Below the pieces are notes generated by a model that was given only the letters and a program-made list of their open reading frames with translations, did no database searches and was not told the origin of the DNA. Shown one piece after another: positions 33,763 to 60,200 of a stretch of DNA of 64,000 nucleotides (its first letter is position 1; each line of letters opens with the position of its first letter). Location: contig CDROCS010000253.1 of the NCBI GenBank assembly GCA_977020255.1, forward strand, positions 620,001-684,000, in the 5' to 3' direction. The position numbers and the translations under genes are program-made. The stretch comes from Obrimoposthia wandeli (taxonomy: Eukaryota).

Positions 33763-34263
33763 TTAAAATAGCCTAGCGGCGGCATTTACATCATCAGGTG
33801 ATAGACGATATATACGCATGGTATCGATACAATATGCGCCTATTTTTTGGTAAAATTCTATGGCAGGAGTGTTCCAATCCAAGCAGCCCCACTCAAGCAT
33901 TTCACAGCCACGTTCGAGCGCAGTTTTTGATAAAAACTGCATTATGATATTACCTAAACCTTTACCACGCATAGAATCATCAATAAAAAAACCATCGATA
34001 AATAGCCCTGAACGTCCGGTAAAAGCTGAACTTTTTTCGTAAAAATATGCAAAAGCAACAACCTCCCCATCATAAAGCCCAAACACGACTTCACCCTGCT
34101 TAGATTCGAGCAAACGCTCTATCCGCTTTGGCGTGGCGGTAATATCATTTGCCATGTTTTGAAAAACACCTAACTTCTGCATAAATTGGACTACCAACGC
34201 GGCATCCGAAGGTGTACCAAAACGAAGGTCAAATTGCGGTACTTGAGTATGAATCAAAGTCAT
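33763..34263 (-). CDS. GNAT acetyltransferase, SSAT/diamine N-acetyltransferase-like
   Basis: FAYFYEKSSAFTGRSGLF, RGKGLG and EWGCLDWNTPAIEFY motifs. Confidence 0.8.
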   Translation of the reverse strand: MTLIHTQVPQFDLRFGTPSDAALVVQFMQKLGVFQNMANDITATPKRIERLLESKQGEVVFGLYDGEVVAFAYFYEKSSAFTGRSGLFIDGFFIDDSMRGKGLGNIIMQFLSKTALERGCEMLEWGCLDWNTPAIEFYQKIGAYCIDTMRIYRLSPDDVNAAARLF

Positions 34264-34581
34264 TGTTATCCTTTTACTAACGAGCTTATAGAATATCTCG
34301 TTTTATTTTATAGTATTTATTAATCGTAACTCGCTAACTCAATTAAATTTTTACAGTACAATTAATTTCCTTATCTTTAATTATTTTATAAAAACAACTT
34401 AGTAGACTTGCTATTAAACAAGCTACAACCCAAATAGTTTCGGGGTAAGTTTCCATGACTAAAGAAGGATTTTAAACATCTTGTGAATTAACCACATAGC
34501 TTGAAATAAAATTATTTAACTGCCGAATTATAACGTTTGAAGGTAGTAAAACGACTATCGCTATTTAAAAAATAATAATAG

Positions 34582-34616
34582 AAAAGACCAACTTGAGCTT
34601 CAAGTTGGTCTTTTTT
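34582..34616. terminator. Strong intrinsic terminator at the end of the glutarate operon
   Basis: AAAAGACCAACTTGA-gct-TCAAGTTGGTCTTTTTT perfect stem immediately after the lhgO stop. Confidence 0.88.
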
Positions 34617-34617
34617 G

Positions 34618-35829
34618 TCATTTAGATGGCGTAGAACAAAAATGTTCACTTACTTTATCGACGATATAGCTACCAATGGGAATTGCTGAAGTAGCGGCTG
34701 GCGATGGCGCATTACAGACATTAATGGTTCGCTCGCTATTAGCAAACAAAAAGTCATGGACTAAGCTACCATCATTCATCACCGCTTGAGCACGAATACC
34801 TGCGGGATACGATTTAAGATCTGATAATTCAATCGATGGGCAATATTTTTGCACTAAGGTTAAATAGCCGTTTTTAAAGAGTGAATTTTTAAATTCAGTA
34901 ATACCAGAACGCAAGTTTTTCCACAGTACTTTCCAGAATCCAGCAAACATTATCATTTCTTTAATATCGCGAAAGTTAATATTAATCTTGCCATAACCTT
35001 CTCGCTTAAAACCCAAGACAGCATTAGGTCCAACGGTAACACTGCCATCAATCATTCGGGTTAAATGCACACCTAAAAAAGGTAATGTTGGATCAGGAAT
35101 AGGATATATCAAGTGATTAACAATGCCGTTTTTATTCGCCGGCAACTGATAATACTCACCACGAAATGGCACAATTTGAAAATCAACGTTAATGTTTAGC
35201 ATTTTGACCACACGATCAGCCATTAGACCCGAGCAAGTGATTAAGTAACGACTAGAAAATTCACCAGCAGTTGTACTAACGCAAACCTGCTCTGCTGTTT
35301 CCTTTAGCTGGGTTACTTTGGTATTTAATAGATATTCACCACCTAACGCTTGAAATTCCTGCGCCATTTTAATGGTAATTAGCTGGTAATCGACAATACC
35401 TGTAGATTTAACCAAAATAGCGCCAAGCCCGGTAATATTAGGTTCATGGACTTTAAGTTGCTCTTTATCTAATAAGTCCACTTCAATATTATTTTTTTGG
35501 CAGCGTTGGTAAAGCGCCGCCATACGCTTTACTTCTACTGTATTGGTGGCAACCAATAACTTACCGCATTGATTAAAAGGAATATTATGTTGCTGGCAAA
35601 AATTGATAGTGGCGTCGACACCTTCTCGACAAAACTTAGCCTTTAAGCTGCCAGGCTCATAATATACGCCAGCATGAATAACACCGCTATTATGTCCTGT
35701 TTGATGTAGCGCAAATTCACTTTCTTTTTCCAGCAAGAGTACTTTTTTATTGGGATAACGTTGTTGTAGCTGCCAAGCAGTCGATACACCAACAATACCA
35801 CCACCGATAATTATGTAGTCATAGATCAT
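34618..35829 (-). CDS. lhgO: L-2-hydroxyglutarate oxidase/dehydrogenase
   Basis: IIGGGIVG, HQTGHNSGVIHAGVYY, PFRGEYY, PFLGVHLT and NAPSPAAT motifs. Confidence 0.95.
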   Translation of the reverse strand: MIYDYIIIGGGIVGVSTAWQLQQRYPNKKVLLLEKESEFALHQTGHNSGVIHAGVYYEPGSLKAKFCREGVDATINFCQQHNIPFNQCGKLLVATNTVEVKRMAALYQRCQKNNIEVDLLDKEQLKVHEPNITGLGAILVKSTGIVDYQLITIKMAQEFQALGGEYLLNTKVTQLKETAEQVCVSTTAGEFSSRYLITCSGLMADRVVKMLNINVDFQIVPFRGEYYQLPANKNGIVNHLIYPIPDPTLPFLGVHLTRMIDGSVTVGPNAVLGFKREGYGKININFRDIKEMIMFAGFWKVLWKNLRSGITEFKNSLFKNGYLTLVQKYCPSIELSDLKSYPAGIRAQAVMNDGSLVHDFLFANSERTINVCNAPSPAATSAIPIGSYIVDKVSEHFCSTPSK

Positions 35830-35844
35830 AAAAACATCCTAGCT

Positions 35845-36807
35845 TTACGGTTTTAGTTTGGCATTTTCACAATAAGCACCGCGCTGACGCAACAATTCAC
35901 GATAGAGGCCTTTATCAGCAACAAATTTATCACGACCATGTAACCAGGCATGATTATTGACAACCAACATACTGCCGACAGGAACACGGACATTAAAAGT
36001 ATTTTGCTCCTCTTCTAATGACTTGCCCATTTCATATAAATACTGACCTTGGCGCATGTTTAAAGGTTCGGCAAATTGATCAATAAACAGCATTTTAGGT
36101 CGACCATTAATGTCTTCTTCAAAAAACACCGGATGTTGTATTTTATAAGTGATATTTTTACTCGCTGGCGAGGTCCATTGAATTTCTTCTTTTGCTAATG
36201 GATGATTATAGAATTTTTCTAAATCTTGCCATTCGTCTACATGTAATAACAAAGAGTCGCCGCCTTCCATATTCTCTTCAGCGATCTTTTGCATAATAAC
36301 CCAGTCAGTACGCTCTTTTACATAGGTGCCGTCATTGTGTAATTCCATACGACGATGGGCTTGACGTAAATAGCTATCACTATCATCGTCATTTTTGACA
36401 CTAAAGCGCGCATAAAATTTTCCATACATTGCATCTAAATTAGGTACACCAATTAAATGAGAAACGGCAGTTGATAATAGAATATTAAACTCAAGCTGAT
36501 CAAATTCAGCGACTACTGGTTCGCACTGCAGCATAAATGCACCCGTGCCTCTACTCTTGATAATGCCTAGCAGTAAGGTGCCTAAAGTATCATTAGTGAG
36601 ATTATTAAGAATACTAGCAACATGAAAACGCAAAAATGGTTTGTATTCTACCGCCTGCACGCCTAATGGTAATGCCTGTTCAATAAATCCTTTCACTGTT
36701 TCAGAGCTTAGCTTTATCACTTGTAAACGTGGATTTGCTGCAAATGGAGCTACCGAAAAGCCATGTGGGATTGATTCATCATTTATTTTTATTACTGAAC
36801 TATTCAT
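35845..36807 (-). CDS. glaH: Glutarate 2-hydroxylase (Fe/2-oxoglutarate dioxygenase, CsiD)
   Basis: MELHNDGTY (HxD), WLHGRD and LLRQRG motifs; adjacent to lhgO. Confidence 0.93.
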   Translation of the reverse strand: MNSSVIKINDESIPHGFSVAPFAANPRLQVIKLSSETVKGFIEQALPLGVQAVEYKPFLRFHVASILNNLTNDTLGTLLLGIIKSRGTGAFMLQCEPVVAEFDQLEFNILLSTAVSHLIGVPNLDAMYGKFYARFSVKNDDDSDSYLRQAHRRMELHNDGTYVKERTDWVIMQKIAEENMEGGDSLLLHVDEWQDLEKFYNHPLAKEEIQWTSPASKNITYKIQHPVFFEEDINGRPKMLFIDQFAEPLNMRQGQYLYEMGKSLEEEQNTFNVRVPVGSMLVVNNHAWLHGRDKFVADKGLYRELLRQRGAYCENAKLKP

Positions 36808-36832: not shown

Positions 36833-38047
36833 TTAACTTACCGTAGCGTTAGCAAATAGCTTACTAATGTTGTCTTCACTGTAATTGAGCGTTTTTGATA
36901 AAACCTGATGACTGTGCTGACCCAAGTCAGGTGAAGCACTGTTATATTGTAATGGTGTCGTCGACAGGTTGATTGGCGATGCTATTGTGTCAATAAGATC
37001 TCCATGTTGATTGGCTACTTGCCTGACCATTTCACGATGCTTGATCTGCGGATGATCAAAGACCTGCGCTAAGGTATTAACGGGGCCACAAGGCACAGCC
37101 ACACTTTCAAGTTGTTCAAGCCACCATTGACTGGTATGTGCAGCAAGTTTAGCGGCCAAAATAGGGATGAGTTTGTCGCGATTAATCACCCGTTGCTCGT
37201 TGGTAGCAAAACAAGGGTCTTGTGCAATATTCGACAGCTTAGCCACGTGACAAAATTTACTGAATTGGTTGTCATTACCTATGGCTAAAATCATGCTGCC
37301 ATCTTGAGTAGCAAACGTTTGATAAGGCACAATGTTGGGGTGTCCGTTACCTAATCGCTGCGGGTTTTTACCCGTGGCTAAATAGTTCATCCCTTGATTG
37401 GCTAATGTGGCTACCTGTACATCAAGCAGGGCAATATCAATATGTTGACCTTCGTTAGTCTGATGTCGAGCCATCAATGCTGCTAGCACCGCATTACAAC
37501 TGTACAAACCGGTCATGACATCAACAAGCGCAACGCCAACTTTCATTGGCATACCTTCAGCATCGCCCGTGATACTCATCAAGCCGCCTTCGCCTTGAAT
37601 CATGCCATCATAGCCAGCCTTATGTGCGCTTGGACCACTTTGCCCAAACCCGGTGATGGAGCAATAAACTAATCTAGGATTAATGGCTTTGACACTTTGA
37701 TAATCAAGACCATATTTAACCAAACCACCCACTTTATAATTTTCAATGAGGACATCAGCCTGAGCGATTAAGTCTTTAATCACTTGTTGACCTTGCTCTT
37801 GGGTAATATCAATAGCAATAGATTGTTTATTACGATTCACGCAATGAAAATATGCGGCTTGCGGTGGCTGTTCTTCTGTCGCTTCTTTTATAAAAGGAGG
37901 CCCCCAAAAGCGAGTATCATCACCTTTTTTAGGGCGCTCCACTTTTATCACTTCTGCGCCCATGTCAGCTAACATTTGCGAGGCCCAAGGCCCCGCTAAT
38001 ATGCGGCTTAAATCGACAACTTTTATGTTCCCTAATGCGCTAGTCAT
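36833..38047 (-). CDS. CaiB/BaiF family III CoA-transferase, probable succinyl-CoA:glutarate CoA-transferase
   Basis: DLSRILAGPW, GDDTRFWGPPF, NRNKQS and GNGHPNIVPYQ motifs; start overlaps the gcdH stop. Confidence 0.85.
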   Translation of the reverse strand: MTSALGNIKVVDLSRILAGPWASQMLADMGAEVIKVERPKKGDDTRFWGPPFIKEATEEQPPQAAYFHCVNRNKQSIAIDITQEQGQQVIKDLIAQADVLIENYKVGGLVKYGLDYQSVKAINPRLVYCSITGFGQSGPSAHKAGYDGMIQGEGGLMSITGDAEGMPMKVGVALVDVMTGLYSCNAVLAALMARHQTNEGQHIDIALLDVQVATLANQGMNYLATGKNPQRLGNGHPNIVPYQTFATQDGSMILAIGNDNQFSKFCHVAKLSNIAQDPCFATNEQRVINRDKLIPILAAKLAAHTSQWWLEQLESVAVPCGPVNTLAQVFDHPQIKHREMVRQVANQHGDLIDTIASPINLSTTPLQYNSASPDLGQHSHQVLSKTLNYSEDNISKLFANATVS

Positions 38048-39228
38048 TAGCAGAAAGCCTGATGACCGGTAATAGCACGACCCAAAATTAGCGCATGAAT
38101 ATCATGAGTACCTTCGTAAGTATTGACGGCTTCAAGATTCATCATATGGCGAATTACGCCAAATTCATCACTAATACCATTGCCACCATGCATATCACGG
38201 GCAACACGAGCAATATCAAGCGACTTGCCACAATTATTACGTTTTAATAAAGAAATCAATTCAACTGGACACTGATCCGCGTCCATTAAACGACCCATTT
38301 GTAAGCAGCCTTGCAAGCCAAGACTTATCTCCGTTTGCATATCAGCAAGTTTCTTTTGAATTAACTGATTAGCAGCCAAAGGGCGACCAAATTGTTCTCG
38401 ATCTAAGGTATAATTACGCGCAGAATTAAAGCAAAACTCTGCAGCCCCTAATGCCCCCCAAGCTATTCCATAACGCGCCTTGTTAAGACAACCAAAAGGT
38501 CCTGCTAATCCGCTAATTTCAGGGAACATATTTTCAGCTGGCACAAAAACGTTATCCATAACAATTTCGCCCGTTATTGAAGCACGTAACGAAAATTTAC
38601 CTTCAATTTTTGGTGCAGATAAACCTTCCATGCCTTTTTCAAGCACGAAACCACGAATTTTACGATCAAGCTTTGCCCAAACAACAAATACATCAGCTAT
38701 AGGTGAATTAGTGATCCACATTTTACTACCGGTTAAACAATAACCGCCATCAACTTTGGTGGCGTGAGTACTCATAGAGGCTGGATCGCTACCTGAGTTA
38801 GGCTCAGTCAAACCAAAACAGCCAACCCATTCACCCGAAGCAAGTTTAGGCAAATATTTCATGCGCTGCTCTTCAGTGCCGTAAGCATAGATAGGATGCA
38901 TAACCAGTGACGATTGCACACTCATGGCGCTGCGATAGCCACTATCGACACGCTCTACTTCCCGAGCGATCAAACCATAACTGACATAATTAATTTCACT
39001 GCCACCATATTGAGCAGGCAAGGTAGCACCCAATAGACCTAATTGACCTAATTCACGCATTATTTCACGGTCAAAGTGTTCGTGTCTATTGGCTTCAAGT
39101 ACACGTGGCAGAAGCTTTTCTTGGCAATAATCATAAGCTGTATCACGTATCATACGCTCTTCTTCAGTGAGTTGATTATCAAGAAACATTGGATCTTGCC
39201 AGTTAAAGGCAGTTAATTTTTGGCTCAT
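38047..39228 (-). CDS. gcdH: Glutaryl-CoA dehydrogenase
   Basis: FNWQDP...[35 protein letters not shown] and [13 protein letters not shown] motifs. Confidence 0.95.
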
Positions 39229-39338
39229 ATGATTAGTCCGTTTATATCCTGTTGTGTAGAGATGAAAAGGGTTTAATTTATTGCTTTACTCTATCCTTAA
39301 AACATAAATAAATATAATATATAGTTTTTATAGTTTTC

Positions 39339-39353
39339 ATAACTTTTACTTAT
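39339..39353. promoter_or_regulatory. LysR-type T-N11-A site in the gcdH / regulator divergent region
   Basis: ATAA-CTTTTAC-TTAT dyad just upstream of the LysR start. Confidence 0.5.
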
Positions 39354-39366
39354 AAGGTGCGCGACG

Positions 39367-40248
39367 ATGAACTTAAAACGTCTTGAATATTTTTGTCAAT
39401 TAGCCATGCTGGGCAACTTTACTCGGGCAGCACATAAAATAGGTATTGCTCAACCAGCGCTAACGATTGCTATGCAAAAGCTAGAACAAGAAGTAGGACT
39501 AAAGTTAATTAATCGTGCTGAAAAAAATTCCTTGTTAACCGCTGAAGGTGAAGTTCTCTATAAACTGGCAACCCAACTATTAAGCCAAGCAAAACAGGTT
39601 GAATTAGAATTAGAAGAACTAAAAGATCTAGAGCAAGGTACTATTCGTTTTGGTGTTTCCGCTATGATGGGCTCTTATTACTTCCCGAAAGTATTAACGG
39701 AATTCAAACAACAGCATCCAAAAATAAAAATGCACTTAGTTGACCAAGGCACAGCGGCACTGGAGAAAATGTTACTCAATGGCGAACTTGATTTAGCCTT
39801 GGTACGCAGTGATTTAGAAAATCCACAACTGCGTTACACTGAGCTATTTAATGAGGAAGTGGTTGCGGGCATGGTCAGTTCACATCCGCTAGCCGCAGAG
39901 AAAACACTATCATTGGCACAATTTTGCCAAGAACCGCTGGTGTTATTTCATGAAGGTTATTTTTTACGTGAAGTTGTTAGCCAATATGCAAAAAAACATC
40001 ACTTAGCCTTAGATATCCGTATGGAAACTAATCTTGTTGAACTGCAAAAATCATTGGTTCGCAATGAGGTGGGTATTACCACGTGTCTATCACGTATTTT
40101 ACAAAACGAACAACAGATGACATCAATACCCTTTGAGCCAAAAATTGAATTTAAGCTGAGTTTGGCATGGAAAAAAAGTCATTACTTGTCTAAAGCCAGT
40201 AAAGCTTTCATGACTTACTTAAGCTCAACGCTTGATCCTATGGATTAA
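39367..40248 (+). CDS. LysR-family regulator divergent from gcdH (GcdR-like position)
   Basis: GNFTRAAHKIGIAQPALT...LEQEVG..L..R helix-turn-helix. Confidence 0.9.
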   Translation: MNLKRLEYFCQLAMLGNFTRAAHKIGIAQPALTIAMQKLEQEVGLKLINRAEKNSLLTAEGEVLYKLATQLLSQAKQVELELEELKDLEQGTIRFGVSAMMGSYYFPKVLTEFKQQHPKIKMHLVDQGTAALEKMLLNGELDLALVRSDLENPQLRYTELFNEEVVAGMVSSHPLAAEKTLSLAQFCQEPLVLFHEGYFLREVVSQYAKKHHLALDIRMETNLVELQKSLVRNEVGITTCLSRILQNEQQMTSIPFEPKIEFKLSLAWKKSHYLSKASKAFMTYLSSTLDPMD

Positions 40249-40664
40249 CTTCAATCAATTACCTCTGTGGATCTTCAAATAAAGTGAGAATTCTTGTGCA
40301 ATATTTTTCTGGGTTGTAACTAGTTAGGGATAAATTAAACGAAGCTTTTGCGTCAAAATTCGAAAGGAAATTACAGAATAATTCACAAATCGCTAGAATA
40401 TAATGGCGACTAAGTAGCTTAGTTGACGGTAGAGTTAGTTTCGCTAAGGACAATTGACCGACATTGCGGTCATTCATTGTTAAACTGGTAACGCTCACTT
40501 TGGCGCATAGGAGATATTAGCGTGAATTTTCTTAGCTATATATTTTCTAATGCTTATTTCTATCAATAGGGCTTAAATACAAGAAGAATAGTTACCTATA
40601 ACATGAGTATAAATTTAGTTCGTGTAACACAACCAAAAAAGCAGATATTACATTTAGAAGCTAG

Positions 40665-41234
40665 TTAGTTCTTTATAGGGACTTCTGGTGGGGAAGAATT
40701 GAAAGTTTTCAGCATAGCAGTCGCGCTTTCAGGAGAAATTTGTTTACTGCGCTCTTGTTCTTTAAGCTTTTGGGTAAATTCTTTGCCTATTTCTAATGTC
40801 ATCAAAACTTTATCGGCTATCTGTTGTTCAAGTACCGATACTGCTTGTTCTTTTTCGTCTTCGTTGAGTATTGTTGACTGCTTTATTTTCGATACTTCTG
40901 CCTTCAGCATCTTTATTTCCTCATCAACCCTGTCCTTTACCTCTTTCATTTTTCTATAATCAACAGGGAGATCGTTTACCTTTTCCTGATATTCTTGTTT
41001 GGCTATTTCATATTCTTTTGTCTTCTGCTCATAAGTCTTATCGCTTTCGGCTTTATCAATATTTTGCAATGCTAATGCTTTAGAGGATAAAATAACTTTT
41101 GTCTCCCCACTTTCTACGACATGTGGTTGAGCAGTTGAGACATTCGCTTTAACATCATTGTGATTATCGATAGAGGCATGCAAACCTTTACCTAAATTTT
41201 TATTCAGATGAAGTTGAGCAGCATAAATTTCCAT
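40665..41234 (-). CDS. Hypothetical coiled-coil protein
   Basis: Long K/E/Q-rich helical ORF; start moved to ATG 41234; no family recognised. Confidence 0.7.
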   Translation of the reverse strand: MEIYAAQLHLNKNLGKGLHASIDNHNDVKANVSTAQPHVVESGETKVILSSKALALQNIDKAESDKTYEQKTKEYEIAKQEYQEKVNDLPVDYRKMKEVKDRVDEEIKMLKAEVSKIKQSTILNEDEKEQAVSVLEQQIADKVLMTLEIGKEFTQKLKEQERSKQISPESATAMLKTFNSSPPEVPIKN

Positions 41235-41765
41235 TACAAAGTTCCATTTTGAAGTTATTAAATATCTCCAACCTACACCACGTTCAGGGTTAGTCAATTA
41301 ATATTGTCTATATAGCATCATATTTAGGTAATACGGACTTAGTGGTCACATTTTATACGCGTAAGTATCCGTTATCGATAAATAATCTAATCCGAAACGA
41401 CTTTAAAGCTCATCAGCTAATGTCCGCAATGCGGCTGTAGTTAGCGTTTCAAAATGACTTACCACTGACGGCTTTGAGCTTAAACCTGCCTAATAAGCTA
41501 GCAGCGAATTTCGATTAATATTACCCTAAATATGACCATGGTTTCACAAAATCCTAATGACCACCTGAACTAAAGCCTCATTGTTGCCGTTACGGACGAC
41601 AGATCTAATGTCAACAAATAGGTGAATAGGTTAACTTCAAAGATTGGGGCAGTCGAAAAAACGTAACAAGTTGTTAAATTTTATTATGGCGCAACGCATT
41701 GATCATTATTTACGATGGTCCACACCTCTCAACAGCAGACAACGATAAATTCGAAAGCCACAAAT

Positions 41766-41799
41766 AATAAAGCCACGACTAATTAGTCGTGGCTTTATT
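41766..41799. terminator. Perfect 34-bp palindrome, terminator for gabD-gabT-spuC
   Basis: AATAAAGCCACGACT-AATT-AGTCGTGGCTTTATT. Confidence 0.8.
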
Positions 41800-50606: not shown

Positions 50607-50651
50607 ATACCAATCAAACTACCTGATCTATTTAAATGGCCTGATTGGTAT
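50607..50651. repeat. 45-bp ATACCAA-family mini-element between potF and potG
   Basis: Perfect 10-bp terminal inverted repeat ATACCAATCA / TGATTGGTAT. Confidence 0.75.
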
Positions 50652-50729
50652 AACTTGCTCTTATTCTTTAGAAAATAACTACAATAACAAACATCTAAAT
50701 CCTGTCGAAAATATCCCTAGGAATACCGA

Positions 50730-52810: not shown

Positions 52811-53613
52811 TGACTAGAAATTCAAAGTTTTTATCAATCTCATCGTTATTTGGTTTCTTGTTTCTTTATGCGCCAATATTTTCATTAATTATTTATAGCT
52901 TTAATAAGTCCAAATTAGTGACAGTTTGGGGCGGCTGGTCGGTAAAGTGGTATGTTGAATTATTTAATAATCAACAAATTATGGATGCGGCAGTCGTGAG
53001 CTTGAAAGTTGCGTTTATCACCGCAACGCTCTCGGTTATTCTTGGCGTTCTGGCTGGTTATGTACTTAGCAGAATGGGAAAGTTTCCGGGTAAATTAATC
53101 GTTTCAGGTTGGATAAGTGCACCACTTATTATGCCTGAAGTGATCACCGGTTTATCATTATTATTACTGTTTGTTTCATTAGAAAACTTAATTGGTTGGC
53201 CTGCCGGACGAGGAATTACCACAATTATTATTGCCCATACTACCTTTTGTATGGCTTACGTTGCCGTTATTGTGCAGTCTCGTTTATCACAAATGGATGA
53301 TTCATTAGAAGAAGCAGCCATGGATTTAGGTGCCAAGCCACACAGTTTATTTTTTCTAATTACTTTACCTATTATATCTCCAGCGATAATTTCTGGTTGG
53401 TTATTAGCATTTACTATGTCTTTAGACGACTTGGTCATCGCAAGTTTTGTTTCCGGTCCAGGCAACAGTACACTGCCTATGGTTATATTTTCTAAGATAA
53501 GATTGGGTGTAACACCTGAGGTGAACGCACTGGCAACAATCATGATTTTAATTGTCGCGATTGGTGTAGTATCAGCTATGTGGCAAATGAGAAAAAAGGA
53601 AAAAAACATCTAA
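52810..53613 (+). CDS. potI: Polyamine ABC transporter permease (PotI/SpuH)
   Basis: FLYAPI...YSFN, MPEVITGLSLL and EEAAMDLGA motifs. Confidence 0.92.
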   Translation: MTRNSKFLSISSLFGFLFLYAPIFSLIIYSFNKSKLVTVWGGWSVKWYVELFNNQQIMDAAVVSLKVAFITATLSVILGVLAGYVLSRMGKFPGKLIVSGWISAPLIMPEVITGLSLLLLFVSLENLIGWPAGRGITTIIIAHTTFCMAYVAVIVQSRLSQMDDSLEEAAMDLGAKPHSLFFLITLPIISPAIISGWLLAFTMSLDDLVIASFVSGPGNSTLPMVIFSKIRLGVTPEVNALATIMILIVAIGVVSAMWQMRKKEKNI

Positions 53614-54270: not shown

Positions 54271-54354
54271 TAACCTTTACAGAACTGTTAAAGACTAGCT
54301 ATTTTACTGAACTCTCAAAAAAAAACAAAGATGAATTAACTGAACTTTCGATTA

Positions 54355-54669
54355 TATACCCGTTCCACTTGAAGATGCATGATTCAGCTGGAATTAGAAA
54401 CGCCTTTAGGCAAGGTATTGATTGAAGAGAATAGTTATTCTATTGTCGAAATCAATAACGCAGCATAAAGCGTTTCTAAACCAGCCTTTTGGGGGAAGTC
54501 TGAGCAAATCATACTCTGCGTTACCTTTCTTTTTAAGGACGCTACATGGAGGTAGCTTCTTAGAGAATGCAGGAGCACATTCTCCTGAATAACCCTTAAT
54601 AAAAAATGCGCCTTGATTATGAATCGCTCAGACTTCCTGAAACGAGCATCTTCAAGTGGAGCGGGTATA
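54355..54669 (+). mobile_element. Full-length 315-bp ERIC-like MITE
   Basis: TATACCCGTTCCACTTGAAGATGC / GCATCTTCAAGTGGAGCGGGTATA (23/24 inverted repeat), flanked by TA on both sides; no ORF; termini resemble the enterobacterial ERIC end TATACCCGTCATACTTCAAG. Confidence 0.9.
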
Positions 54670-55002
54670 TACAAAGAAAATTAAGCTACTCTAGTAAATC
54701 AATGAGGTCAAAGCATTTGAAGTAGTCGTTTTGGCTTTGATTTAATAGTTTCAGGTTAGAGCTGTCAACAGCAACAATGAGCTTAGAGGGGGCGTAGATA
54801 ATGGAGACTTCAATTTATTTGTTGTGAACATGAAATGAGTCTCAAAACCTATTTCGTCAACGTCCGCAAGCCTTAACAATGAGTGAACAACCCCTTATCT
54901 CAGGACAAGATTAAAAAAAGCACATCAGACGATTTAATTTTTGAGTCCATAGGTTCAGCTCATTTGTATAGTTGATCTGATAGCTAATAAATTAAGGGCA
55001 AT

Positions 55003-55060: not shown

Positions 55061-56344
55061 TTAGATACCTAACTTATCTCTCATCTGGTAATACCAAGCG
55101 CCCATCGCGGTGTAAGGCGTTTTTAATAACCTACCACCAGGAAATGGATATTGAGGTAAGCCAGCAAATACATCAAAGCGTTCTGCTTGACCCGTTATTG
55201 CATCGGCAATAACTTTACCGGCTAAGTGTGTTGAAGTAACGCCATGACCACTATAGCCTTGAGCATAATAGACATTGTCATTTATACGGCCAAATTGTGG
55301 TAAGCGCATTAACGTGAGCAAAAAGTTACCTGTCCAAGCATAATCAATTTTTACATCCTTAAGTTGAGGAAATGTTTTCAACATTTTAGGAATGATAATT
55401 GATTCAATTTTAGAAGGCTCTCTCGCCCCATAGGTTGTGCCACCACCGTAGATAAGACGACCATCACCCGATAAACGGAAGTAATCTAATAGGTAGTTAC
55501 AATCTTCTACGCAGACATTGGTCGGTAATAATTGCTTTTGCACGGCTTCTGGCAATACTTCTGTGGTGATAATTTGCGTGCCACATGGCATTGATTGTTT
55601 CTGTTGCTTAGGTAAAAGCCCTTCTAAATAGGCGTTACCTGCTACGACAACGAAATCAGCTGTTACGCTACCTGAGTCCGTTTTAATGACCGCTTTTTTA
55701 CCATGAACAATATCAACAACGGTACTGTCTTCGTAAATTATTCCACCTAACTTTTCAAACGCAGCAGCTTCACCAAGCGCTAAGTTGAGAGGATGAATAT
55801 GACCACCTGCTTTATCTAATAAGCCACCCACGTAACGTTCAGTACCGACATGTTTTTGAATGTCACTTGCACTTAATAACTCAGTTTCATGGTAGCCATG
55901 CTTAGCCCACAGTTTTTGTTTTTCAGCCATTTCATCAAGCTGTTTGTTGTTACAAGCGGCAAAAACACCTCCTGGTCTTAAATCACACTTGATGTCGTAA
56001 TCATTAATTAAACGTTTAATTATTCGACTACCTTCAAAGGCCATTTGTCCCATTTCAGTACTAACATGCTGGCCATAATTACGTTCAATAAAGTCCATAT
56101 CTCGACTGTAGCTATTAACTAATTGGCCACCGTTGCGACCTGAAGCACCAAAACCAATACGACTGCCTTCAACAACAACCACTTTGAAACCTTTTTCGGC
56201 TAAATGTAATGCGCTTGATAAGCCAGTAAAACCAGAGCCAACAACGCATATGTCAGCGGTAATATCTTCTGTCAGCTTTGATCGCTGCACTTTATCATTT
56301 GCACTTGCCGCATAATAAGAGCCTGTGTGGGAAACATGATTCAT
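55061..56344 (-). CDS. puuB: Gamma-glutamylputrescine oxidase-like FAD oxidoreductase
   Basis: SYYAASAN, GFGASGRNGGQ, VEDCNYLLDYFRLS and YAQGYSGHG motifs. Confidence 0.92.
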   Translation of the reverse strand: MNHVSHTGSYYAASANDKVQRSKLTEDITADICVVGSGFTGLSSALHLAEKGFKVVVVEGSRIGFGASGRNGGQLVNSYSRDMDFIERNYGQHVSTEMGQMAFEGSRIIKRLINDYDIKCDLRPGGVFAACNNKQLDEMAEKQKLWAKHGYHETELLSASDIQKHVGTERYVGGLLDKAGGHIHPLNLALGEAAAFEKLGGIIYEDSTVVDIVHGKKAVIKTDSGSVTADFVVVAGNAYLEGLLPKQQKQSMPCGTQIITTEVLPEAVQKQLLPTNVCVEDCNYLLDYFRLSGDGRLIYGGGTTYGAREPSKIESIIIPKMLKTFPQLKDVKIDYAWTGNFLLTLMRLPQFGRINDNVYYAQGYSGHGVTSTHLAGKVIADAITGQAERFDVFAGLPQYPFPGGRLLKTPYTAMGAWYYQMRDKLGI

Positions 56345-56382: not shown

Positions 56383-57753
56383 TTAGCTATTAGATAAGTA
56401 CCATTTAACTTCTAACTCACTAATATGCATATCAAATTGTTCTAACTCTTTTTGTTTAACAAGGTGATAGTTTTTAGTAAATTCTTCGCCTAAATAGCTT
56501 GTAAGTATTTGATCTTTTTCTAATGCTGCAAGTGCTCTATCTAATTTTAATGGTAGTGCTTCACAATCATCATCAAACGCGTTTCCTACGGTAGGCGTTA
56601 TTGGTTTGATTTTATTGGTTATACCATAATGAATAGACGCTAAAATTACGCTCATCACTAAATAGGGGTTTGCATCGGCACCAGAAACTCTATGCTCTAT
56701 ACGCGTTGCATTTTTATGTCCTCTAGGAAGACGAAGTGCGACAGTTCTGTTGTCTACTCCCCAATTTTTTGCCATAGCAACATAGTAGCCAGGCATAAAT
56801 CGACGATAAGAATTCACGTTAGGACATAACAACGGCATTGAGGCTGGCATGAGCTCAAGCAAACCACCGATGGCGTGCTCTAATGTTTCATTGTAATCTT
56901 TATTGTCATCCGCAAAAACATTGTTGCCTTGTTCATCTAATAAACTAGCGTGAACATGCATACCACTACCGGCTTCATTTGAATAAGGTTTAGCCATAAA
57001 AGTCGCATCAAAATTATGTTTATCAGCAACAGTTTTTATAATACGCTTTAATAAAATCGCATTATCACAAGCAGCGACAGGATCAGCTTCATGTTTTAAA
57101 TTTATTTCAAATTGCCCAGGAGCACATTCTGCTACGGCGGTATCTGCAGGAACATTTTGCTCAATACACACTCTATTAATATCATCTAATAAGGCACTGT
57201 AATCATTAAGTGTATCAACAGAGTAAACTTGAGTATGTTCATCTCTTTTACCGGTTTTAGGCGAGATTGGTGCTTGTAAATTACCCTTGTTATCTTTGTT
57301 TTTATCTAATAGGTAAAATTCTAACTCAACAGCAACAACGGGGAATAAATTTAATTCGGCTAATTTCCCAACGATGTTACTTAATATATTACGCGGGTCA
57401 GCAAAAAAAGGTGTGCCATCGTGGTTAAACATACTCATTAATACTTGCGCTATTGGGCGATCATGCCAAGAAGCCATATGAAGGGTATTCGCTATGGGTT
57501 TACAAACCATATCCGGCTCGCCAATATCTTGCCCAAGTCCGCATTCTTCAATCGTTTCCCCAAGTACATTCATAGAAAATATTGTCGCGGGCATATTTAA
57601 ACCGCTGCTGTAAATTTTTTCTAAGCTACTTTTCTCAATACGCTTTCCTCGTGCAAAGCCAACTAAATCAGAAATGAGGACATCTATAGCCTCAACTTCG
57701 GGGTGATTGGAAAGAAATTTTTCTACCTCTGCTGCCTGTCCAACGTTTATCAT
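56383..57753 (-). CDS. puuA: Gamma-glutamylputrescine synthetase (glutamine-synthetase-like)
   Basis: VAVELEFYL, ECAPGQFEINL, ATFMAKPY, GSGMHVHAS and RIEHRVSGADANPY motifs; puu context. Confidence 0.9.
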   Translation of the reverse strand: MINVGQAAEVEKFLSNHPEVEAIDVLISDLVGFARGKRIEKSSLEKIYSSGLNMPATIFSMNVLGETIEECGLGQDIGEPDMVCKPIANTLHMASWHDRPIAQVLMSMFNHDGTPFFADPRNILSNIVGKLAELNLFPVVAVELEFYLLDKNKDNKGNLQAPISPKTGKRDEHTQVYSVDTLNDYSALLDDINRVCIEQNVPADTAVAECAPGQFEINLKHEADPVAACDNAILLKRIIKTVADKHNFDATFMAKPYSNEAGSGMHVHASLLDEQGNNVFADDNKDYNETLEHAIGGLLELMPASMPLLCPNVNSYRRFMPGYYVAMAKNWGVDNRTVALRLPRGHKNATRIEHRVSGADANPYLVMSVILASIHYGITNKIKPITPTVGNAFDDDCEALPLKLDRALAALEKDQILTSYLGEEFTKNYHLVKQKELEQFDMHISELEVKWYLSNS

Positions 57754-57798
57754 AAAATTACCTTAGAAATTGATACATATAATTTACCCACCACTAAA

Positions 57799-57852
57799 TG
57801 ATGAATATTTTCTTCACTATCTATTAATATGTAATTGTAATGTCTTCGTCAA
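57799..57852 (-). promoter_or_regulatory. Sigma-70 promoter for puuA-puuB with a candidate operator just downstream
   Basis: Minus strand TTGACG-N17-TATTAA (57852 to 57824), followed by TGAAGAAAATATTCATCA (57816 to 57799). Confidence 0.6.
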
Positions 57853-58006
57853 GGTAAAATCAAATAATTAAGCTTTATTTTTTACATAAAATCATTTTAA
57901 TGGTGTTTTACTGCCTTTTTGTAAAAAATATTGATTGAAAGTCGTTGTTTTTTAATTTACCTTAGAGTTATTGAAATTTCGCAGTAACTTATTTGGAATT
58001 GATTCG

Positions 58007-58774
58007 ATGGTTAGTACAAATCAGAAACCTATTGTTGGCATTACTTGTTGTAGTAGCCTTAACGGGATTCATCATCAACAAGTTGTTGGTGATAAATATA
58101 TTCGTGCCTTGATGGCCGGTAGTGATGTTATTCCCGTTTTAATTCCTAGTTTTGGTGAAGCAATGTTAGAAATATTACCGCATTTAGATGGTATATATTT
58201 AACAGGTAGTTATTCGAATATGGAACCACATCATTTTGGTGGTACTGAATTAGGGGTAGATATGCCACGTGACCCCAATCGAGATACCACCAATTTAACC
58301 TTATTAAAAAAAGCAGTAGAGCTAAAAATCCCCGTGTTGGGTATTTGCCGAGGTTTTCAAGAAATGAATGTTGCGCTGGGCGGAACATTACATCAGCAAG
58401 TTTTTGAACTCGATAATATGACAGAGCATAGAGAAGATAAATCGGTATCTATGGATGAGCAGTACAGTGTGTCTCATGACTTAAACTTATCTGAGGCCGG
58501 TATATTATCTTCACTTATGGATGGAGAGTTGGTTCAGCAAGTTAATTCATTACATGGCCAAGGCGTTGATAAATTAGCAGGCACTTTAAAAGTTGAAGGC
58601 ACTGCTCCTGATGGCTTAATTGAAGCTTTTTCATTGGCTGATAGCGCTAGTTATTATTTAGGCTTGCAGTGGCACCCTGAATGGAAAATTGCAGAGAACC
58701 CTTTTTACACCGAAATTTTTAAAAGTTTTGGCGATGCTTGTCGAAAATACAAAGCAAATGAAGCATACAGTTAA
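58007..58774 (+). CDS. puuD: Gamma-glutamyl-gamma-aminobutyrate hydrolase
   Basis: LDGIYLTGSYSNMEP, LGICRGFQEMNV (catalytic Cys), VNSLHGQG and LQWHPE motifs; start moved to ATG 58007. Confidence 0.93.
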   Translation: MVSTNQKPIVGITCCSSLNGIHHQQVVGDKYIRALMAGSDVIPVLIPSFGEAMLEILPHLDGIYLTGSYSNMEPHHFGGTELGVDMPRDPNRDTTNLTLLKKAVELKIPVLGICRGFQEMNVALGGTLHQQVFELDNMTEHREDKSVSMDEQYSVSHDLNLSEAGILSSLMDGELVQQVNSLHGQGVDKLAGTLKVEGTAPDGLIEAFSLADSASYYLGLQWHPEWKIAENPFYTEIFKSFGDACRKYKANEAYS

Positions 58775-58852
58775 CTCCCTTAATGTAATAAACTAACTCT
58801 TTATCAACGCAGATGCTGCCTAATCAGTGCAGTCAGCTTATTAAGGGTCATT

Positions 58853-59395
58853 ATGGAAGTAGGCAAAAGATTAAAAGAAGTTAGAGAAATGTATGGGCTT
58901 TCACAACGTGAATTAGCAAAACGCGTTGGTTTAACAAATAGCACTATTTCAATGATAGAAAGAGATGCTGTAAGCCCATCTATTAGCTCTTTAAAGAAAA
59001 TTTTAGAAGGTGTTTCTTTAACCGTTACTGAATTTTTCACCTTAGAAATTCCTACAGAATCTCAAGTGGTTTTTAAAAAAGATACCTTAATTGATGTAGG
59101 AAGTGATGGTGTAGAGCTTCATTTGGTTGGCGCAGCACAACCAGAGTCTAAACTTGCATTTTTGATTGAAACTTATCAACCAGCCTCTAGTACAGGCAAA
59201 GATATGATCACTCACATTGGTGAAGAAGCCGGAACAGTTATTGAGGGAAGTATCGAGATAACAGTTGCAGGGCGTAGTTTTAAGCTAACTAAAGGCGATA
59301 GTTACAAATTTTCGACCAGCCTACCGCATAGGTTTAAGAATACATCGAAAAAAGTTTGTAAAATTATTAGTGCGCATACGCCGCCTTCTTTTTAG
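58853..59395 (+). CDS. puuR: XRE-HTH + cupin repressor
   Basis: LSQRELAKRVGLTNSTISMIE...SPSISSL and HIGEEAGTVIEG...PHRF motifs; follows puuD as in E. coli. Confidence 0.9.
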   Translation: MEVGKRLKEVREMYGLSQRELAKRVGLTNSTISMIERDAVSPSISSLKKILEGVSLTVTEFFTLEIPTESQVVFKKDTLIDVGSDGVELHLVGAAQPESKLAFLIETYQPASSTGKDMITHIGEEAGTVIEGSIEITVAGRSFKLTKGDSYKFSTSLPHRFKNTSKKVCKIISAHTPPSF

Positions 59396-59534
59396 CGTAA
59401 TTATGTAGCCATAAAGCTAGCTGTTATTGATTTTTTAGCACCCATATGGGGGTTAATTAAAAAACTAAAATACATTAGATTGTATTTGATTTGATTTAAT
59501 TTAAAAAACCATAAAACCATAAAAAAGGAATAAC

Positions 59535-60200
59535 ATGAAAAAAATTAAATTGTTAGCAGCAGCACTCGCACTTACGGCTATAGCCCCCCTTACCCATGCA
59601 GAAGTAAGTGTTACCGGCACATTAACCTCAGATTACGTATTCCGAGGTGTTAGTCAAACAGATAGCTCTCCAGCTATCCAAGCTAGTTTAGATTACGAAC
59701 ATGAAAGTGGATTTTTTGCCGGTGCTTGGGCATCAAATGTCGACTTCGAAGATGATGCTAATGCAGAAATTGATTTCTACGCCGGTTACTTTGGTGAAAT
59801 TAATGACACTTTTTCTTATGATGTTATGTATAACTACTACACCTATCAAGGTTACAGTTCAGCAGATGATTCTGATTACGGCGAGTTCCTTTTTAATGCT
59901 TATGTTAACTCGTTCACGTTAGGCCTTGGTTATGCTTCTGATTATGTAAATACCGGTGATTCAGCACAGTATGTTTCCGTGGCTTATGATATCGAACTTC
60001 CTAGAGAGTATGCCTTAACTTTACAGGCCGGCTATACCATGGGTGATGCATTTGACGATGCCGAGTATGTAGATTACAGCGCAACGGTTGCAAAAACATT
60101 TTACGATTTTGATTTTACTGCTGCGGTTATAAATACTGATATTGATGACGTAGACACAGCTGACTTCCGCTTTGTTTTAGGTGTTTCTCGTACATTTTAA
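59535..60200 (+). CDS. TorF/TIGR02001(Gcw_chp)-like putative outer-membrane porin
   Basis: Signal peptide; SDYVFRGVSQT...PAIQASLDY, GAWASNV and EIDFYAGY motifs; terminal Phe. Confidence 0.85.
   Translation: MKKIKLLAAALALTAIAPLTHAEVSVTGTLTSDYVFRGVSQTDSSPAIQASLDYEHESGFFAGAWASNVDFEDDANAEIDFYAGYFGEINDTFSYDVMYNYYTYQGYSSADDSDYGEFLFNAYVNSFTLGLGYASDYVNTGDSAQYVSVAYDIELPREYALTLQAGYTMGDAFDDAEYVDYSATVAKTFYDFDFTAAVINTDIDDVDTADFRFVLGVSRTF

What the first reader, a model, noticed from the sequence alone, without database searches (positions are those of the whole stretch)
33763..60200. ~26 kb diamine catabolic cluster with all steps for cadaverine to 5-aminovalerate to glutarate, not only putrescine to GABA
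Seen: uptake (potFGHI), gamma-glutamylation (puuA, puuB, puuD, puuR), transamination (spuC-like), an ALDH, gabT/gabD and the glutarate operon are all clustered. Known: putrescine (C4) ends at succinate and needs no glutarate genes. Cadaverine (C5) processed by the same enzyme types gives 5-aminovalerate and then glutarate, and E. coli GabT/GabD accept these C5 substrates. Inference: the linkage to glutarate genes suggests the cluster also handles cadaverine or other C5 amines from decaying marine protein, using four local regulators (two LysR, PuuR and possibly a shared operator).
Basis: partly seen in the sequence, partly recalled or inferred. Interest (0 to 1): 0.7.

Follow-up and report, generated by a model that had tools for sequence, protein, structure and literature searches.

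The report
Diamine and glutarate breakdown gene island
A Colwellia-like marine bacterium carries, in 26 kb, intact genes to import diamines and break them down to succinate (C4) or, through glutarate, to central metabolism (C5); this is a new arrangement of pathways already worked out in E. coli and Pseudomonas.

Summary
The gene content is confirmed. Window 33763-60200 holds these units:
- gcdH-gcoT-glaH(csiD)-lhgO, with a divergent LysR.
- gabD-gabT-spuC, with a second divergent LysR.
- ALDH-potFGHI.
- puuA-puuB, facing puuD-puuR-Gcw_chp.

The C5 reading is well supported by association but not shown biochemically.
- The window holds the only close GabT, PuuA-type enzyme and GcdH found on this >=4.5 Mb chromosome.
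- Within its own GlaH clade, gabDT lies within 10 kb of the glutarate genes in 9 of 13 loci.
- In a sister GlaH clade from marine metagenomes, glaH-lhgO sits beside spuC/puuA/puuB/potFGH in all 12 informative contigs.
- E. coli csiD-lhgO-gabDTP and GabT/GabD activity on 5-aminovalerate are published (Knorr 2018).

- There are three regulators, not four.
- The sequence shared by several spacers is a 321-bp MITE with at least 40 copies on the chromosome, not an operator.
- The cluster is an accessory trait. GlaH was found in 1 of 201 sampled family genomes, and four Colwellia genomes lack GlaH, PuuA-like and SpuC-like genes.
- The ALDH belongs to none of the known aminoaldehyde dehydrogenase families.

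New detail: the four-gene operon with both glutarate routes recurs in relatives and decays by deletion. A sister species in the same assembly and this strain appear to have lost reciprocal gcdH-gcoT pairs.

The scan had already noted the operon (s1-204581). Interest is modest.

The parts
33763..34263 (-). GNAT acetyltransferase (166 aa). Membership in the cluster is uncertain.
   Evidence: Pfam PF00583, E 2.6e-16. It is separated from lhgO by a terminator. It is absent from sister contig C2253. Homologues of 72-77% identity lie within 4-6 kb of lhgO or beside gabD in L137 and L150/L153.
34582..34614 (-). Intrinsic terminator ending the glutarate operon
   Evidence: A 15-pair stem followed by a T run.
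34618..35829 (-). lhgO, L-2-hydroxyglutarate oxidase/dehydrogenase
   Evidence: NF008726, 621.9 bits against a cut-off of 299, matched over its full length.
35845..36807 (-). glaH (csiD), glutarate 2-hydroxylase
   Evidence: NF002814, 472.1 bits against a cut-off of 333, model positions 1-311 of 311.
36833..38047 (-). gcoT-like family III CoA-transferase (succinyl-CoA:glutarate)
   Evidence: The best NCBIfam match is NF052585, 515 bits, under its cut-off of 750. Human SUGCT (9br6) matches at E 1e-97. Its stop overlaps the gcdH end.
38047..39228 (-). gcdH, glutaryl-CoA dehydrogenase. It is the only copy found on chromosome C253.
   Evidence: PDB glutaryl-CoA dehydrogenases 3gnc/3eom/3d6b at E 2e-190, human 1siq at 1e-182. 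The own-genome search found one hit on C253.
39229..39366 (.). Divergent control region between gcdH and lysR1, holding a conserved operator/promoter block
   Evidence: About 75 nt are nearly invariant in the window, C2253, G147 and G003. This holds whether gcdH or glaH follows.
39367..40248 (+). LysR1, a GcdR-type LysR regulator
   Evidence: LysR family. An 89% orthologue is divergent from gcdH alone in G003. Homologues of about 50% identity are divergent from glaH-lhgO in Vibrio-like genomes.
40249..41769 (.). Strain-specific 1.5-kb insert carrying orf210 (40665-41297, -), which matches no family
   Evidence: It is absent from C2253 by blastn breakpoints. There is no Pfam or NCBIfam match.
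41832..43187 (-). spuC-like diamine:pyruvate aminotransferase, the last gene of gabD-gabT-spuC
   Evidence: PRK07480, 768 bits against 510. PDB 6hx9, 9j4z (polyamine:pyruvate transaminase) and 6gwi (putrescine aminotransferase) match at about E 1e-195 to 1e-199.
43262..44548 (-). gabT, 4-aminobutyrate (and predicted 5-aminovalerate) aminotransferase. It is the only close copy on C253.
   Evidence: TIGR00700, 574.5 bits against 506.65. The next-best hit on C253 is 40% identical.
44571..44861 (.). Insertion inside the gabD-gabT spacer that contains a MITE fragment (44705-44800)
   Evidence: It is absent from C2253. Inverted repeats I1/I4 match the MITE.
44930..46414 (-). gabD, succinate- (and predicted glutarate-) semialdehyde dehydrogenase
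   Evidence: TIGR01780, 689.7 bits against 646.35.
46520..47443 (+). LysR2, divergent from gabD
   Evidence: LysR family. The lysR2-gabD-gabT trio is conserved in Colwellia, Psychromonas, Pseudoalteromonas and Shewanella loci.
47447..47640 (.). MITE fragment (47447-47536), then a degraded remnant of the 5' end of a second (type-B) gcoT (about 47577-47640)
   Evidence: In C2253 an intact gcoT'-gcdH' pair sits at this position.
47889..49313 (+). Aldehyde dehydrogenase of an unassigned subfamily, the first gene of ALDH-potFGHI. It is the predicted amino-aldehyde or gamma-glutamyl-aminoaldehyde dehydrogenase.
   Evidence: Pfam Aldedh. It is under the cut-offs of PatD-type PRK13473 (399 against 615), PuuC (325 against 850) and TIGR03374 (285 against 909). 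The nearest PDB entries are 3i44, 6x9l and 3ty7. A 58% homologue lies between puuB-like and spuC-like genes in L169.
49494..53613 (+). potF, potG, potH, potI: PotF/SpuD-type diamine ABC importer
   Evidence: The best matches are the E. coli PotF/G/H/I equivalogs, each under its cut-off. PotG passes TIGR01187. PotF matches E. coli PotF and P. aeruginosa SpuD at about E 1e-115.
54353..54673 (.). Complete 321-bp MITE with about 35-nt terminal inverted repeats. Partial copies lie at 33662-33748, 44705-44800 and 47447-47536.
   Evidence: At least 40 copies lie on C253 (217 candidates in the first look).
55061..56344 (-). puuB/pauB-like FAD oxidoreductase
   Evidence: Pfam DAO, E 1e-72. It lies 38 bp downstream of the puuA-like gene.
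56383..57753 (-). puuA/pauA-like gamma-glutamyl-polyamine synthetase. It is the only copy found on C253.
   Evidence: Gln-synt_C, E 1e-107. NF045547 gives 243 bits, under its cut-off of 650. The own-genome search is.
57754..57970 (.). Divergent puuA | puuD control region
   Evidence: It has the same layout as the E. coli PuuR-bound puuA-puuD spacer (PMC9951944). It is highly conserved in C2253. A 10-mer occurs in the window only twice, both times here.
57971..60268 (+). puuD-like hydrolase (57971-58774), puuR (58853-59395), Gcw_chp protein (59535-60200) and a terminator (60241-60268)
   Evidence: NF008471, 209 bits against 266. NF007408, 212.6 bits against 211. PF09694. The terminator has 11 pairs.

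Best explanation
This is an accessory catabolic island of a Colwellia-like bacterium. One set of enzymes degrades both C4 and C5 diamines and their omega-amino acids.

Proposed route:
1. PotFGHI imports diamines.
2. Two entry routes convert them to omega-amino acids. One is the SpuC-type transaminase plus the ALDH. The other is PuuA gamma-glutamylation, PuuB oxidation, the ALDH, then PuuD hydrolysis.
3. Putrescine yields GABA. Cadaverine would yield 5-aminovalerate.
4. GabT and GabD convert GABA to succinate and 5-aminovalerate to glutarate.
5. Glutarate is predicted to activate the GcdR-type LysR1. LysR1 drives one transcript, gcdH-gcoT-glaH-lhgO, which encodes both known glutarate routes. 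The first is GcoT/GcdH to crotonyl-CoA. The second is GlaH to L-2-hydroxyglutarate, then LhgO to 2-oxoglutarate.
6. PuuR controls the divergent puu promoters. LysR2 controls gabD-gabT-spuC.

Shown here: gene identities, gene order, terminators, conservation and rearrangements.
Inferred: chain-length range of every enzyme, the regulators' effectors, and co-transcription.
For: Gene identities:
- Family and PDB matches.

Single copies:
- The own-genome searches found only one close GabT, one PuuA-like protein and one GcdH on chromosome C253, all in this window. The same GabT/GabD would therefore have to serve any C5 flux.
- PotFGHI is the only transporter in the island.

Linkage of gabDT to glutarate genes:
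- Sister contig C2253 has the whole cluster.
- G147 has gabT-gabD, lysR2, lysR1 and gcdH-gcoT-glaH-lhgO back to back.
- The same holds in metagenome contigs L144, L145, L147, L149, L157 and L158.
- 10 of 20 GlaH-positive genomes sampled in the order have gabD within 10 kb.

Linkage of polyamine genes to glutarate genes:
- In C2253, gcoT'-gcdH' is transcribed divergently from ALDH-potFGHI.
- All 12 informative contigs of the sister GlaH clade carry GATase, agmatinase, puuB, spuC, puuA and potFGH next to glaH-lhgO.

LysR1:
- Its operator block is conserved in four genomes.
- Its orthologue pairs with gcdH alone in G003. This is the P. putida gcdR-gcdH layout, where glutarate is the effector (PMC6667623).

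Literature:
- E. coli GabT/GabD take 5-aminovalerate (Km 439 against 197 uM for GABA) and PatA/PatD take cadaverine (PMC6265302).
- PuuA acts on cadaverine about as well as on putrescine (PMC9397018).
- P. putida U spuC2 is induced by cadaverine (PMC10606097).

Independent sample:
- A contig from a run of another study spans the glaH-gcoT junction.
Against: - No enzyme here has been assayed, and sequence does not separate C4 from C5 specificity.
- PotF is of the putrescine-preferring PotF/SpuD type.
- The ALDH is not a PatD, PuuC or TIGR03374 member.
- PuuA, PuuD, GcoT and PotFGHI fall under their equivalog cut-offs.
- G147's minimal module lacks adjacent polyamine genes. The nearest lie 15-20 kb away.
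- No lysine decarboxylase of the PF01276 type was found on C253, so any cadaverine must come from outside the cell.
- The two polyamine-linked GlaH clades are sisters in the tree. That association may therefore be one old event, not two independent ones.
- No RNA data were found.
Confidence: 0.65

Rival explanations
1. There are two modules that merely sit side by side. The pot/puu/spuC genes degrade only putrescine (and agmatine-derived putrescine) to GABA. The gabDT-glutarate module is fed by 5-aminovalerate from lysine or from outside, or by free glutarate. Cadaverine is not a substrate.
For: - G147 and L149 carry gabDT plus the four-gene glutarate operon with no polyamine gene directly attached.
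- PotF resembles the putrescine-binding PotF/SpuD.
- The sister-clade clusters contain agmatinase, a C4-specific enzyme.
- The region is full of MITE copies and strain-specific indels, so neighbours can change easily.
Against: - The island has no importer for 5-aminovalerate or glutarate, such as GabP or a dicarboxylate carrier.
- spuC is in the same transcription unit as gabD-gabT (74-bp gap).
- In C2253 the glutaryl-CoA genes share a control region with ALDH-potFGHI.
- glaH-lhgO stays beside polyamine genes across a diverse clade.
- Homologous SpuC, PatA and PuuA enzymes accept cadaverine.
Confidence: 0.25
2. The adjacency has no metabolic meaning. gabDT serve GABA only. The glutarate operon serves lysine/tryptophan-derived glutaryl-CoA and removal of L-2-hydroxyglutarate. 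The cluster is a chance product of island assembly.
For: - Relatives keep lysR2-gabD-gabT without any glutarate gene nearby.
- Relatives keep gcdH elsewhere.
- LhgO alone can serve L-2-HG catabolism in some bacteria (PMC8206213).
Against: - GlaH specifically needs free glutarate, whose known bacterial source is 5-aminovalerate via GabT/GabD.
- gabDT-glaH-lhgO linkage recurs in enterobacterial, Vibrio-like and Colwellia-like lineages in three different gene orders. It is noted as common in the literature.
- After the apparent reciprocal deletions, both sister species still keep one gcdH-gcoT pair inside the cluster.
Confidence: 0.08

Closest known systems
E. coli csiD(glaH)-lhgO-gabDTP operon with CsiR (lysine > cadaverine > 5-aminovalerate > glutarate > L-2-HG > 2-oxoglutarate; Knorr et al. 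2018, PMC6265302)
   Same: GlaH and LhgO orthologues pass the equivalog cut-offs. They are physically linked to gabD and gabT. The proposed flow is the same, with GabT/GabD acting on both C4 and C5 substrates.
   Different: - No CsiR (GntR) and no GabP are present; a LysR regulator takes that place.
- glaH-lhgO are fused behind gcdH-gcoT.
- gabDT form a separate unit with spuC and their own LysR.
- puu and pot genes are adjacent, whereas in E. coli they lie elsewhere.
Pseudomonas putida KT2440 glutarate catabolism: gcdR-gcdH-gcoT plus csiR-csiD-lhgO (PMC6667623)
   Same: Both glutarate routes are present. A divergent LysR sits beside gcdH-gcoT in the same order. Glutarate is the likely inducer.
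   Different: In P. putida the two routes are at separate loci, with independent regulators and no cross-regulation. Here they lie in one apparent operon behind one LysR-controlled region.
Pseudomonas aeruginosa / P. putida polyamine catabolism (spuC, pauA-D, pauR, spuDEFGH) and E. coli puuA-puuD-puuR
   Same: - A SpuC-type pyruvate transaminase (PDB matches at about E 1e-199).
- A GS-like PuuA/PauA with a DAO-type PuuB/PauB.
- A GATase-type PuuD.
- An XRE-cupin PuuR, with the divergent puuA | puuD-puuR layout.
- A PotF/SpuD-type binding protein.
   Different: - There is one copy of each enzyme, where Pseudomonas has many paralogues.
- The ALDH is not PauC/KauB, PuuC or PatD-like.
- No PuuP or PuuE is present.

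Membership tests
Glutarate hydroxylase GlaH/CsiD (NF002814) | Full-length match over the curated equivalog cut-off | tested here: met
   472.1 bits against 333, model positions 1-311 of 311.
L-2-hydroxyglutarate oxidase LhgO (NF008726) | Full-length match over the curated equivalog cut-off, and a position directly after glaH | tested here: met
   621.9 bits against 299. There is a 15-bp gap after glaH.
Decarboxylating glutaryl-CoA dehydrogenase (GcdH/GCDH) | Much closer to solved GCDHs than to other acyl-CoA dehydrogenases | tested here: met
   636 bits to Burkholderia GCDH and 610 to human GCDH, against 227 or less for other ACADs. Catalytic residues were not inspected one by one.
Succinate-glutarate CoA-transferase (NF052585 / GcoT / SUGCT) | Score over the curated cut-off | tested here: not met
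   515 bits against 750. It is still the best family match, and it resembles human SUGCT at E 1e-97. The function is inferred from this and from its position beside gcdH.
GabT (TIGR00700) and GabD (TIGR01780) | Scores over the curated cut-offs | tested here: met
   574.5 against 506.65, and 689.7 against 646.35. Activity on C5 substrates is not testable with these tools.
SpuC-type polyamine:pyruvate aminotransferase | Member of the PRK07480 subfamily and nearest to solved SpuC enzymes | tested here: met
   768 bits against 510. PDB 5ti8, 6hx9, 9j4z and 6gwi match at E 1e-195 to 3e-199.
E. coli Puu pathway (PuuA, PuuB, PuuC, PuuD, PuuR) | Each protein over its equivalog cut-off | tested here: not met
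   - PuuR passes narrowly (212.6 against 211).
- PuuA scores 243 against 650.
- PuuD scores 209 against 266.
- The ALDH scores 325 against 850 on the PuuC model.
- No PuuB model was matched.
The locus works like a Puu/Pau system by layout, but it is not an orthologous set.
PotFGHI putrescine ABC importer | Four genes in the order F-G-H-I, each over its equivalog cut-off | tested here: inconclusive
   The order is met. The equivalog scores are under their cut-offs: 435 against 636, 484 against 613, 420 against 489 and 350 against 476. PotG passes the TIGR01187 polyamine subfamily. PotF matches E. coli PotF and SpuD at E 1e-115.
Aminoaldehyde dehydrogenases PatD/YdcW (PRK13473, TIGR03374) | Score over the cut-off | tested here: not met
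   399 against 615, and 285 against 909. The nearest solved structures carry no polyamine annotation.
E. coli-type csiD operon | A CsiR (GntR) repressor and a GabP permease in the locus | tested here: not met
   None of the ORFs of 90 aa or more in 33763-60200 is a GntR regulator or an amino-acid permease.
GcdR-gcdH-gcoT locus (Pseudomonas type) | A LysR regulator divergent from gcdH, followed by gcoT | tested here: met
   The layout is met. The lysR1|gcdH pair is conserved in G003 and G147. Orthology to Pseudomonas GcdR itself was not tested, and the glutarate effector is not testable here.

The most novel reading that the evidence does not exclude
In a clade of cold-marine bacteria, glutarate hydroxylase genes have been kept next to polyamine uptake and catabolism genes over long evolutionary time. 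One non-redundant enzyme set handles both putrescine and cadaverine. The chain lengths are separated only at the dicarboxylate stage. There, a single glutarate-sensing LysR switches on both glutarate routes from one promoter, unlike the independent GcdR and CsiR circuits of Pseudomonas. This would mark cadaverine as a regular dissolved organic nitrogen substrate in sea-ice and marine habitats.
Probability: 0.4. Interest if true: 0.45.

Novelty: new variant of a known kind. Interest (0 to 1): 0.3.

Why it matters
Putrescine and cadaverine are common nitrogen-rich products of decaying biomass. A compact single-copy island that covers uptake through to central metabolism would be a convenient model for how marine heterotrophs use them. 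It would also be a usable marker set (glaH-lhgO beside spuC/puu/pot) for reading cadaverine use from metagenomes.

The fused gcdH-gcoT-glaH-lhgO operon and its natural deletion variants are a ready-made comparison of the two glutarate routes under one regulator. The variants are loss of gcoT, loss of both CoA-route genes, and relocation of the pair.

None of this changes the known biochemistry.

Tried and rejected
1. Shared operator. The only sequence shared by several spacers is a 321-bp MITE with about 35-nt inverted ends. It has one full copy and three partial copies in the region, and at least 40 copies on the chromosome. A direct repeat upstream of the ALDH gene is local and not enriched. 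A 10-mer repeated in the puuA|puuD spacer occurs nowhere else in the window. A second candidate motif is at chance level.

2. Conservation across the family. Within 10 kb of gabD, the closest species representatives keep only lysR2-gabD-gabT. Five Colwellia genomes lack GlaH, and four of them were also searched for PuuA-like and SpuC-like genes and lack those too.

3. An endogenous cadaverine source. A PF01276 decarboxylase was found only on another contig, C506, and not on C253. The tool's counts are lower bounds. DavB/DavA were not searched, because no specific model accession was at hand.

4. RNA families. Rfam gave no match in 33000-64000.

5. Expression. No RNA run holds the stretch.

6. 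'Own genome' counts. G000 is a 1.35-Gb mixed assembly with several bacteria, so only hits on contig C253 were counted.

8. The large protein searches were not used, because family scans and PDB searches sufficed.

Full report
**Setting**

The window is G000:C253:620001-684000. G000 is a 1.35-Gb assembly of 6912 contigs that holds several bacteria; five GlaH genes lie on five contigs. Contig C253 reaches at least 4.48 Mb, so it is essentially a bacterial chromosome. I therefore counted only hits on C253 as belonging to the same organism. The best GabD relative is Colwellia piezophila at 84%. The best GcdH relative is the genome of locus L012, Colwellia sp. MB02u-6, at 94%. The organism is a Colwellia-like gammaproteobacterium with 36-41% G+C. 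Small shares of its 31-mers turn up in sea-ice and marine metagenomes.

**Observation**

On the minus strand lie lhgO, glaH, a gcoT-like CoA-transferase and gcdH (34618-39228). A strong terminator follows lhgO, and a LysR gene is divergent from gcdH (39367-40248). Next come spuC-like, gabT and gabD (41832-46414, minus strand), with a second divergent LysR (46520-47443). Then come an ALDH and potFGHI (47889-53613, plus strand). After that lie puuB-like and puuA-like genes (55061-57753, minus strand). These face puuD-like, puuR and a Gcw_chp protein (57971-60200, plus strand), which end at a terminator.

- GlaH, LhgO, GabT, GabD, the SpuC subfamily and PuuR pass curated cut-offs.
- GcoT, PuuA, PuuD and PotFGHI are best matches under their cut-offs.
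- GcdH is unmistakable from solved structures (E 2e-190).
- GcoT resembles human SUGCT.
- SpuC resembles solved Pseudomonas SpuC-type and polyamine:pyruvate transaminases.
- PotF resembles E. coli PotF and P. aeruginosa SpuD.
- The ALDH is the weak link. It falls under the cut-offs of PatD-type, PuuC and TIGR03374 models. Its nearest structures carry no polyamine annotation.

The assembly is sound. A source-sample contig spans 36676-40091 without a difference. A 2307-nt contig from a run of a different study spans 35000-37177, covering the glaH-gcoT junction, with 3 differences.

**Regulators and the 'shared operator'**

There are three regulators: LysR1, LysR2 and PuuR. The sequence that recurs in the spacers is a 321-bp element at 54353-54673 with about 35-nt inverted ends. 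Partial copies lie at 33662-33748, 44705-44800 (inside the gabD-gabT spacer) and 47447-47536. It has at least 40 copies on C253 and also occurs on related contigs. It is a MITE, not an operator. I found no motif shared between the control regions.

The LysR1 control region has a block of about 75 nt that is almost invariant in four genomes. The puuA|puuD spacer has the same layout as the PuuR-bound spacer of E. coli.

**Is the linkage conserved?**

It is not conserved across the family as such.
- Within 10 kb of gabD, species representatives of Colwellia, Psychromonas, Pseudoalteromonas and Shewanella keep only lysR2-gabD-gabT.
- GlaH was found in 1 of 201 sampled genomes of the family and in 20 of 401 of the order.
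- Five Colwellia genomes lack GlaH. Four of them were also searched for PuuA-like and SpuC-like genes and lack those too.

The island is an accessory trait. Where the genes do exist, however, they are linked.
- A sister species in the same assembly (contig C2253, about 89% nucleotide identity) has the whole cluster.
- The single GlaH-positive family genome, G147, has gabT-gabD, lysR2, lysR1 and gcdH-gcoT-glaH-lhgO back to back.
- Metagenome contigs repeat both layouts.
- In the order-level sample, 10 of 20 GlaH loci have gabD within 10 kb. Some are in the E. coli order. Others are in a Vibrio-like order where a LysR about 50% identical to LysR1 is divergent from glaH-lhgO.

**Link to diamines specifically**

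Three observations go beyond gabDT.
1. spuC is the third gene of the gabD-gabT unit, and PotFGHI is the only importer in the island.
2. In C2253 a second, divergent pair gcoT'-gcdH' (54% and 76% identity) is transcribed divergently from ALDH-potFGHI, sharing a 248-bp spacer with it.
3. A GlaH clade of 61-67% identity from marine metagenomes (G+C 0.33-0.42) has glaH-lhgO directly beside polyamine genes in all 12 contigs with enough flank. The neighbours are a GATase, agmatinase, puuB-like, spuC-like, puuA-like and potFGH genes. In contig L169, a 58% homologue of the window's ALDH sits between puuB-like and spuC-like genes. This is the best support for the ALDH's role.

In a quick GlaH tree this clade is sister to the window's clade (joint support 100). 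The association may therefore be one old event that has been kept, not two independent ones. The accompanying polyamine genes are only 37-55% identical and are differently ordered.

**Single-copy argument**

The own-genome searches found only one close GabT, one PuuA-like protein and one GcdH on C253, all in the window. If the organism converts 5-aminovalerate at all, this GabT/GabD pair does it. That matches the shared-enzyme logic shown in E. coli.

**Micro-evolution of the glutarate operon**

The four-gene operon occurs in the window, G147, L149 and L152. Derived forms also exist.
- C2253 and six metagenome contigs have lysR1|glaH-lhgO. The same operator block is present, and a remnant of about 54 nt of the gcoT 3' end lies upstream of glaH.
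- L150/L151/L153 have gcdH, a gcoT remnant, glaH and lhgO.
- L154 has lysR1|glaH-lhgO.

Conversely, the window has a MITE fragment where C2253 carries gcoT'-gcdH'. Beside it lies a degraded stretch that aligns to the first ~55 nt of gcoT', with the start codon lost. The simplest reading is that the common ancestor held both pairs and each species lost one. The remnants are short, so this is moderate evidence. None of the 20 order-level GlaH loci has gcdH or gcoT beside glaH. One metagenome contig, L174, has the two routes convergent but not fused.

**Mechanism**

The steps are given under Best explanation. Gene identity, gene order and conservation are shown here. Substrate range, effectors and co-transcription are inferred from homologues:
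- GabT/GabD and PatA/PatD on C5 substrates.
- PuuA on cadaverine.
- Cadaverine-induced spuC2.
- GcdR sensing glutarate.

**Comparison and novelty**

The biochemistry is that of the E. coli lysine-cadaverine-glutarate pathway and the Pseudomonas Pau/Spu and Gcd/Csi systems. The differences are these:
- Both glutarate routes lie in one LysR-controlled operon. In P. putida they are separate loci that are independently regulated, with no cross-regulation.
- No CsiR or GabP is present.
- spuC is appended to gabDT.
- There is one copy of each enzyme.
- Uptake, both entry routes and both exits are consolidated in 26 kb.

I rate this a new variant of a known kind, of modest interest. The scan's note s1-204581 had already flagged the fused operon on this same stretch. 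My checks agree with it.

**Limits**

- No RNA evidence exists in the runs offered.
- Tool counts in the mixed assembly are lower bounds.

Noticed in passing
window 54353-54673 (full copy); 33662-33748, 44705-44800, 47447-47536 (partial copies); weaker match at 7624-7648: A 321-bp MITE-like element with about 35-nt terminal inverted repeats. It has at least 40 copies on chromosome C253 (217 first-look candidates) and copies on related contigs. In sister contig C2253 one copy lies between puuB and puuA and another just after lhgO, so insertion sites differ between the two species.
   Followed up: partly
window 47577-47640 and 36833-36886; G000:C2253 14527-14600 and 21314-23701: Apparent reciprocal loss of two redundant gcdH-gcoT pairs in two sister species. 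Each genome keeps one pair inside the cluster and a short degraded remnant of the other.
   Followed up: partly
L150, L151, L153 (metagenome contigs), about 8636-12189 in locus coordinates: A variant operon, gcdH-glaH-lhgO, in which gcoT is reduced to a remnant of about 110 nt covering residues 348-384. A gcdH without its CoA-transferase partner raises the question of how glutaryl-CoA is made there.
   Followed up: no
L159, L160, L163, L164, L167, L169, L171, L173, L179, L182, L185, L187: In an uncultured marine lineage (G+C 0.33-0.42), glaH-lhgO follows rppH. It is flanked by GATase, agmatinase, puuB-like, spuC-like, puuA-like and potFGH genes. The taxon is not identified.
   Followed up: partly
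window 59535-60200: A Gcw_chp protein (PF09694, function unknown) follows puuR and ends at a terminator. It is conserved in C2253. A 62% homologue lies beside lysR2-gabD-gabT in a Psychrosphaera MAG (L020). It may be an outer-membrane component for amine or GABA uptake.
   Followed up: no
window 33763-34263: A small GNAT acetyltransferase lies downstream of lhgO. Homologues of 72-77% identity lie near lhgO or gabD in unrelated loci (L137, L150, L153), but it is missing from sister contig C2253. It could be a diamine acetyltransferase.
   Followed up: no
window 61445-63826 (-): A YdiJ-like protein with FAD-oxidase_C, 4Fe-4S and CCG domains. Its ORF starts only 116 residues before the FAD-oxidase_C domain, and no FAD_binding_4 domain was detected. 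An in-frame stop lies upstream inside the window. This could be a frameshift, a split gene or a truncation. It is conserved at 90% in C2253.
   Followed up: partly
window 40249-41769 (orf210 at 40665-41297) and 53646-55052 (glutaredoxin-like ORF at 54037-54270): Two strain-specific inserts, absent from C2253. One carries a Lys/Glu-rich 210-aa ORF that matches no family. The other carries a 77-aa CPHC glutaredoxin-like ORF and the MITE.
   Followed up: no
G000 as a whole: The assembly (1.35 Gb, 6912 contigs) holds several bacterial genomes. These include a near-complete chromosome (C253) and fragments of a sister species at about 89% nucleotide identity (C2253). 'Own genome' searches therefore mix organisms.
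   Followed up: partly
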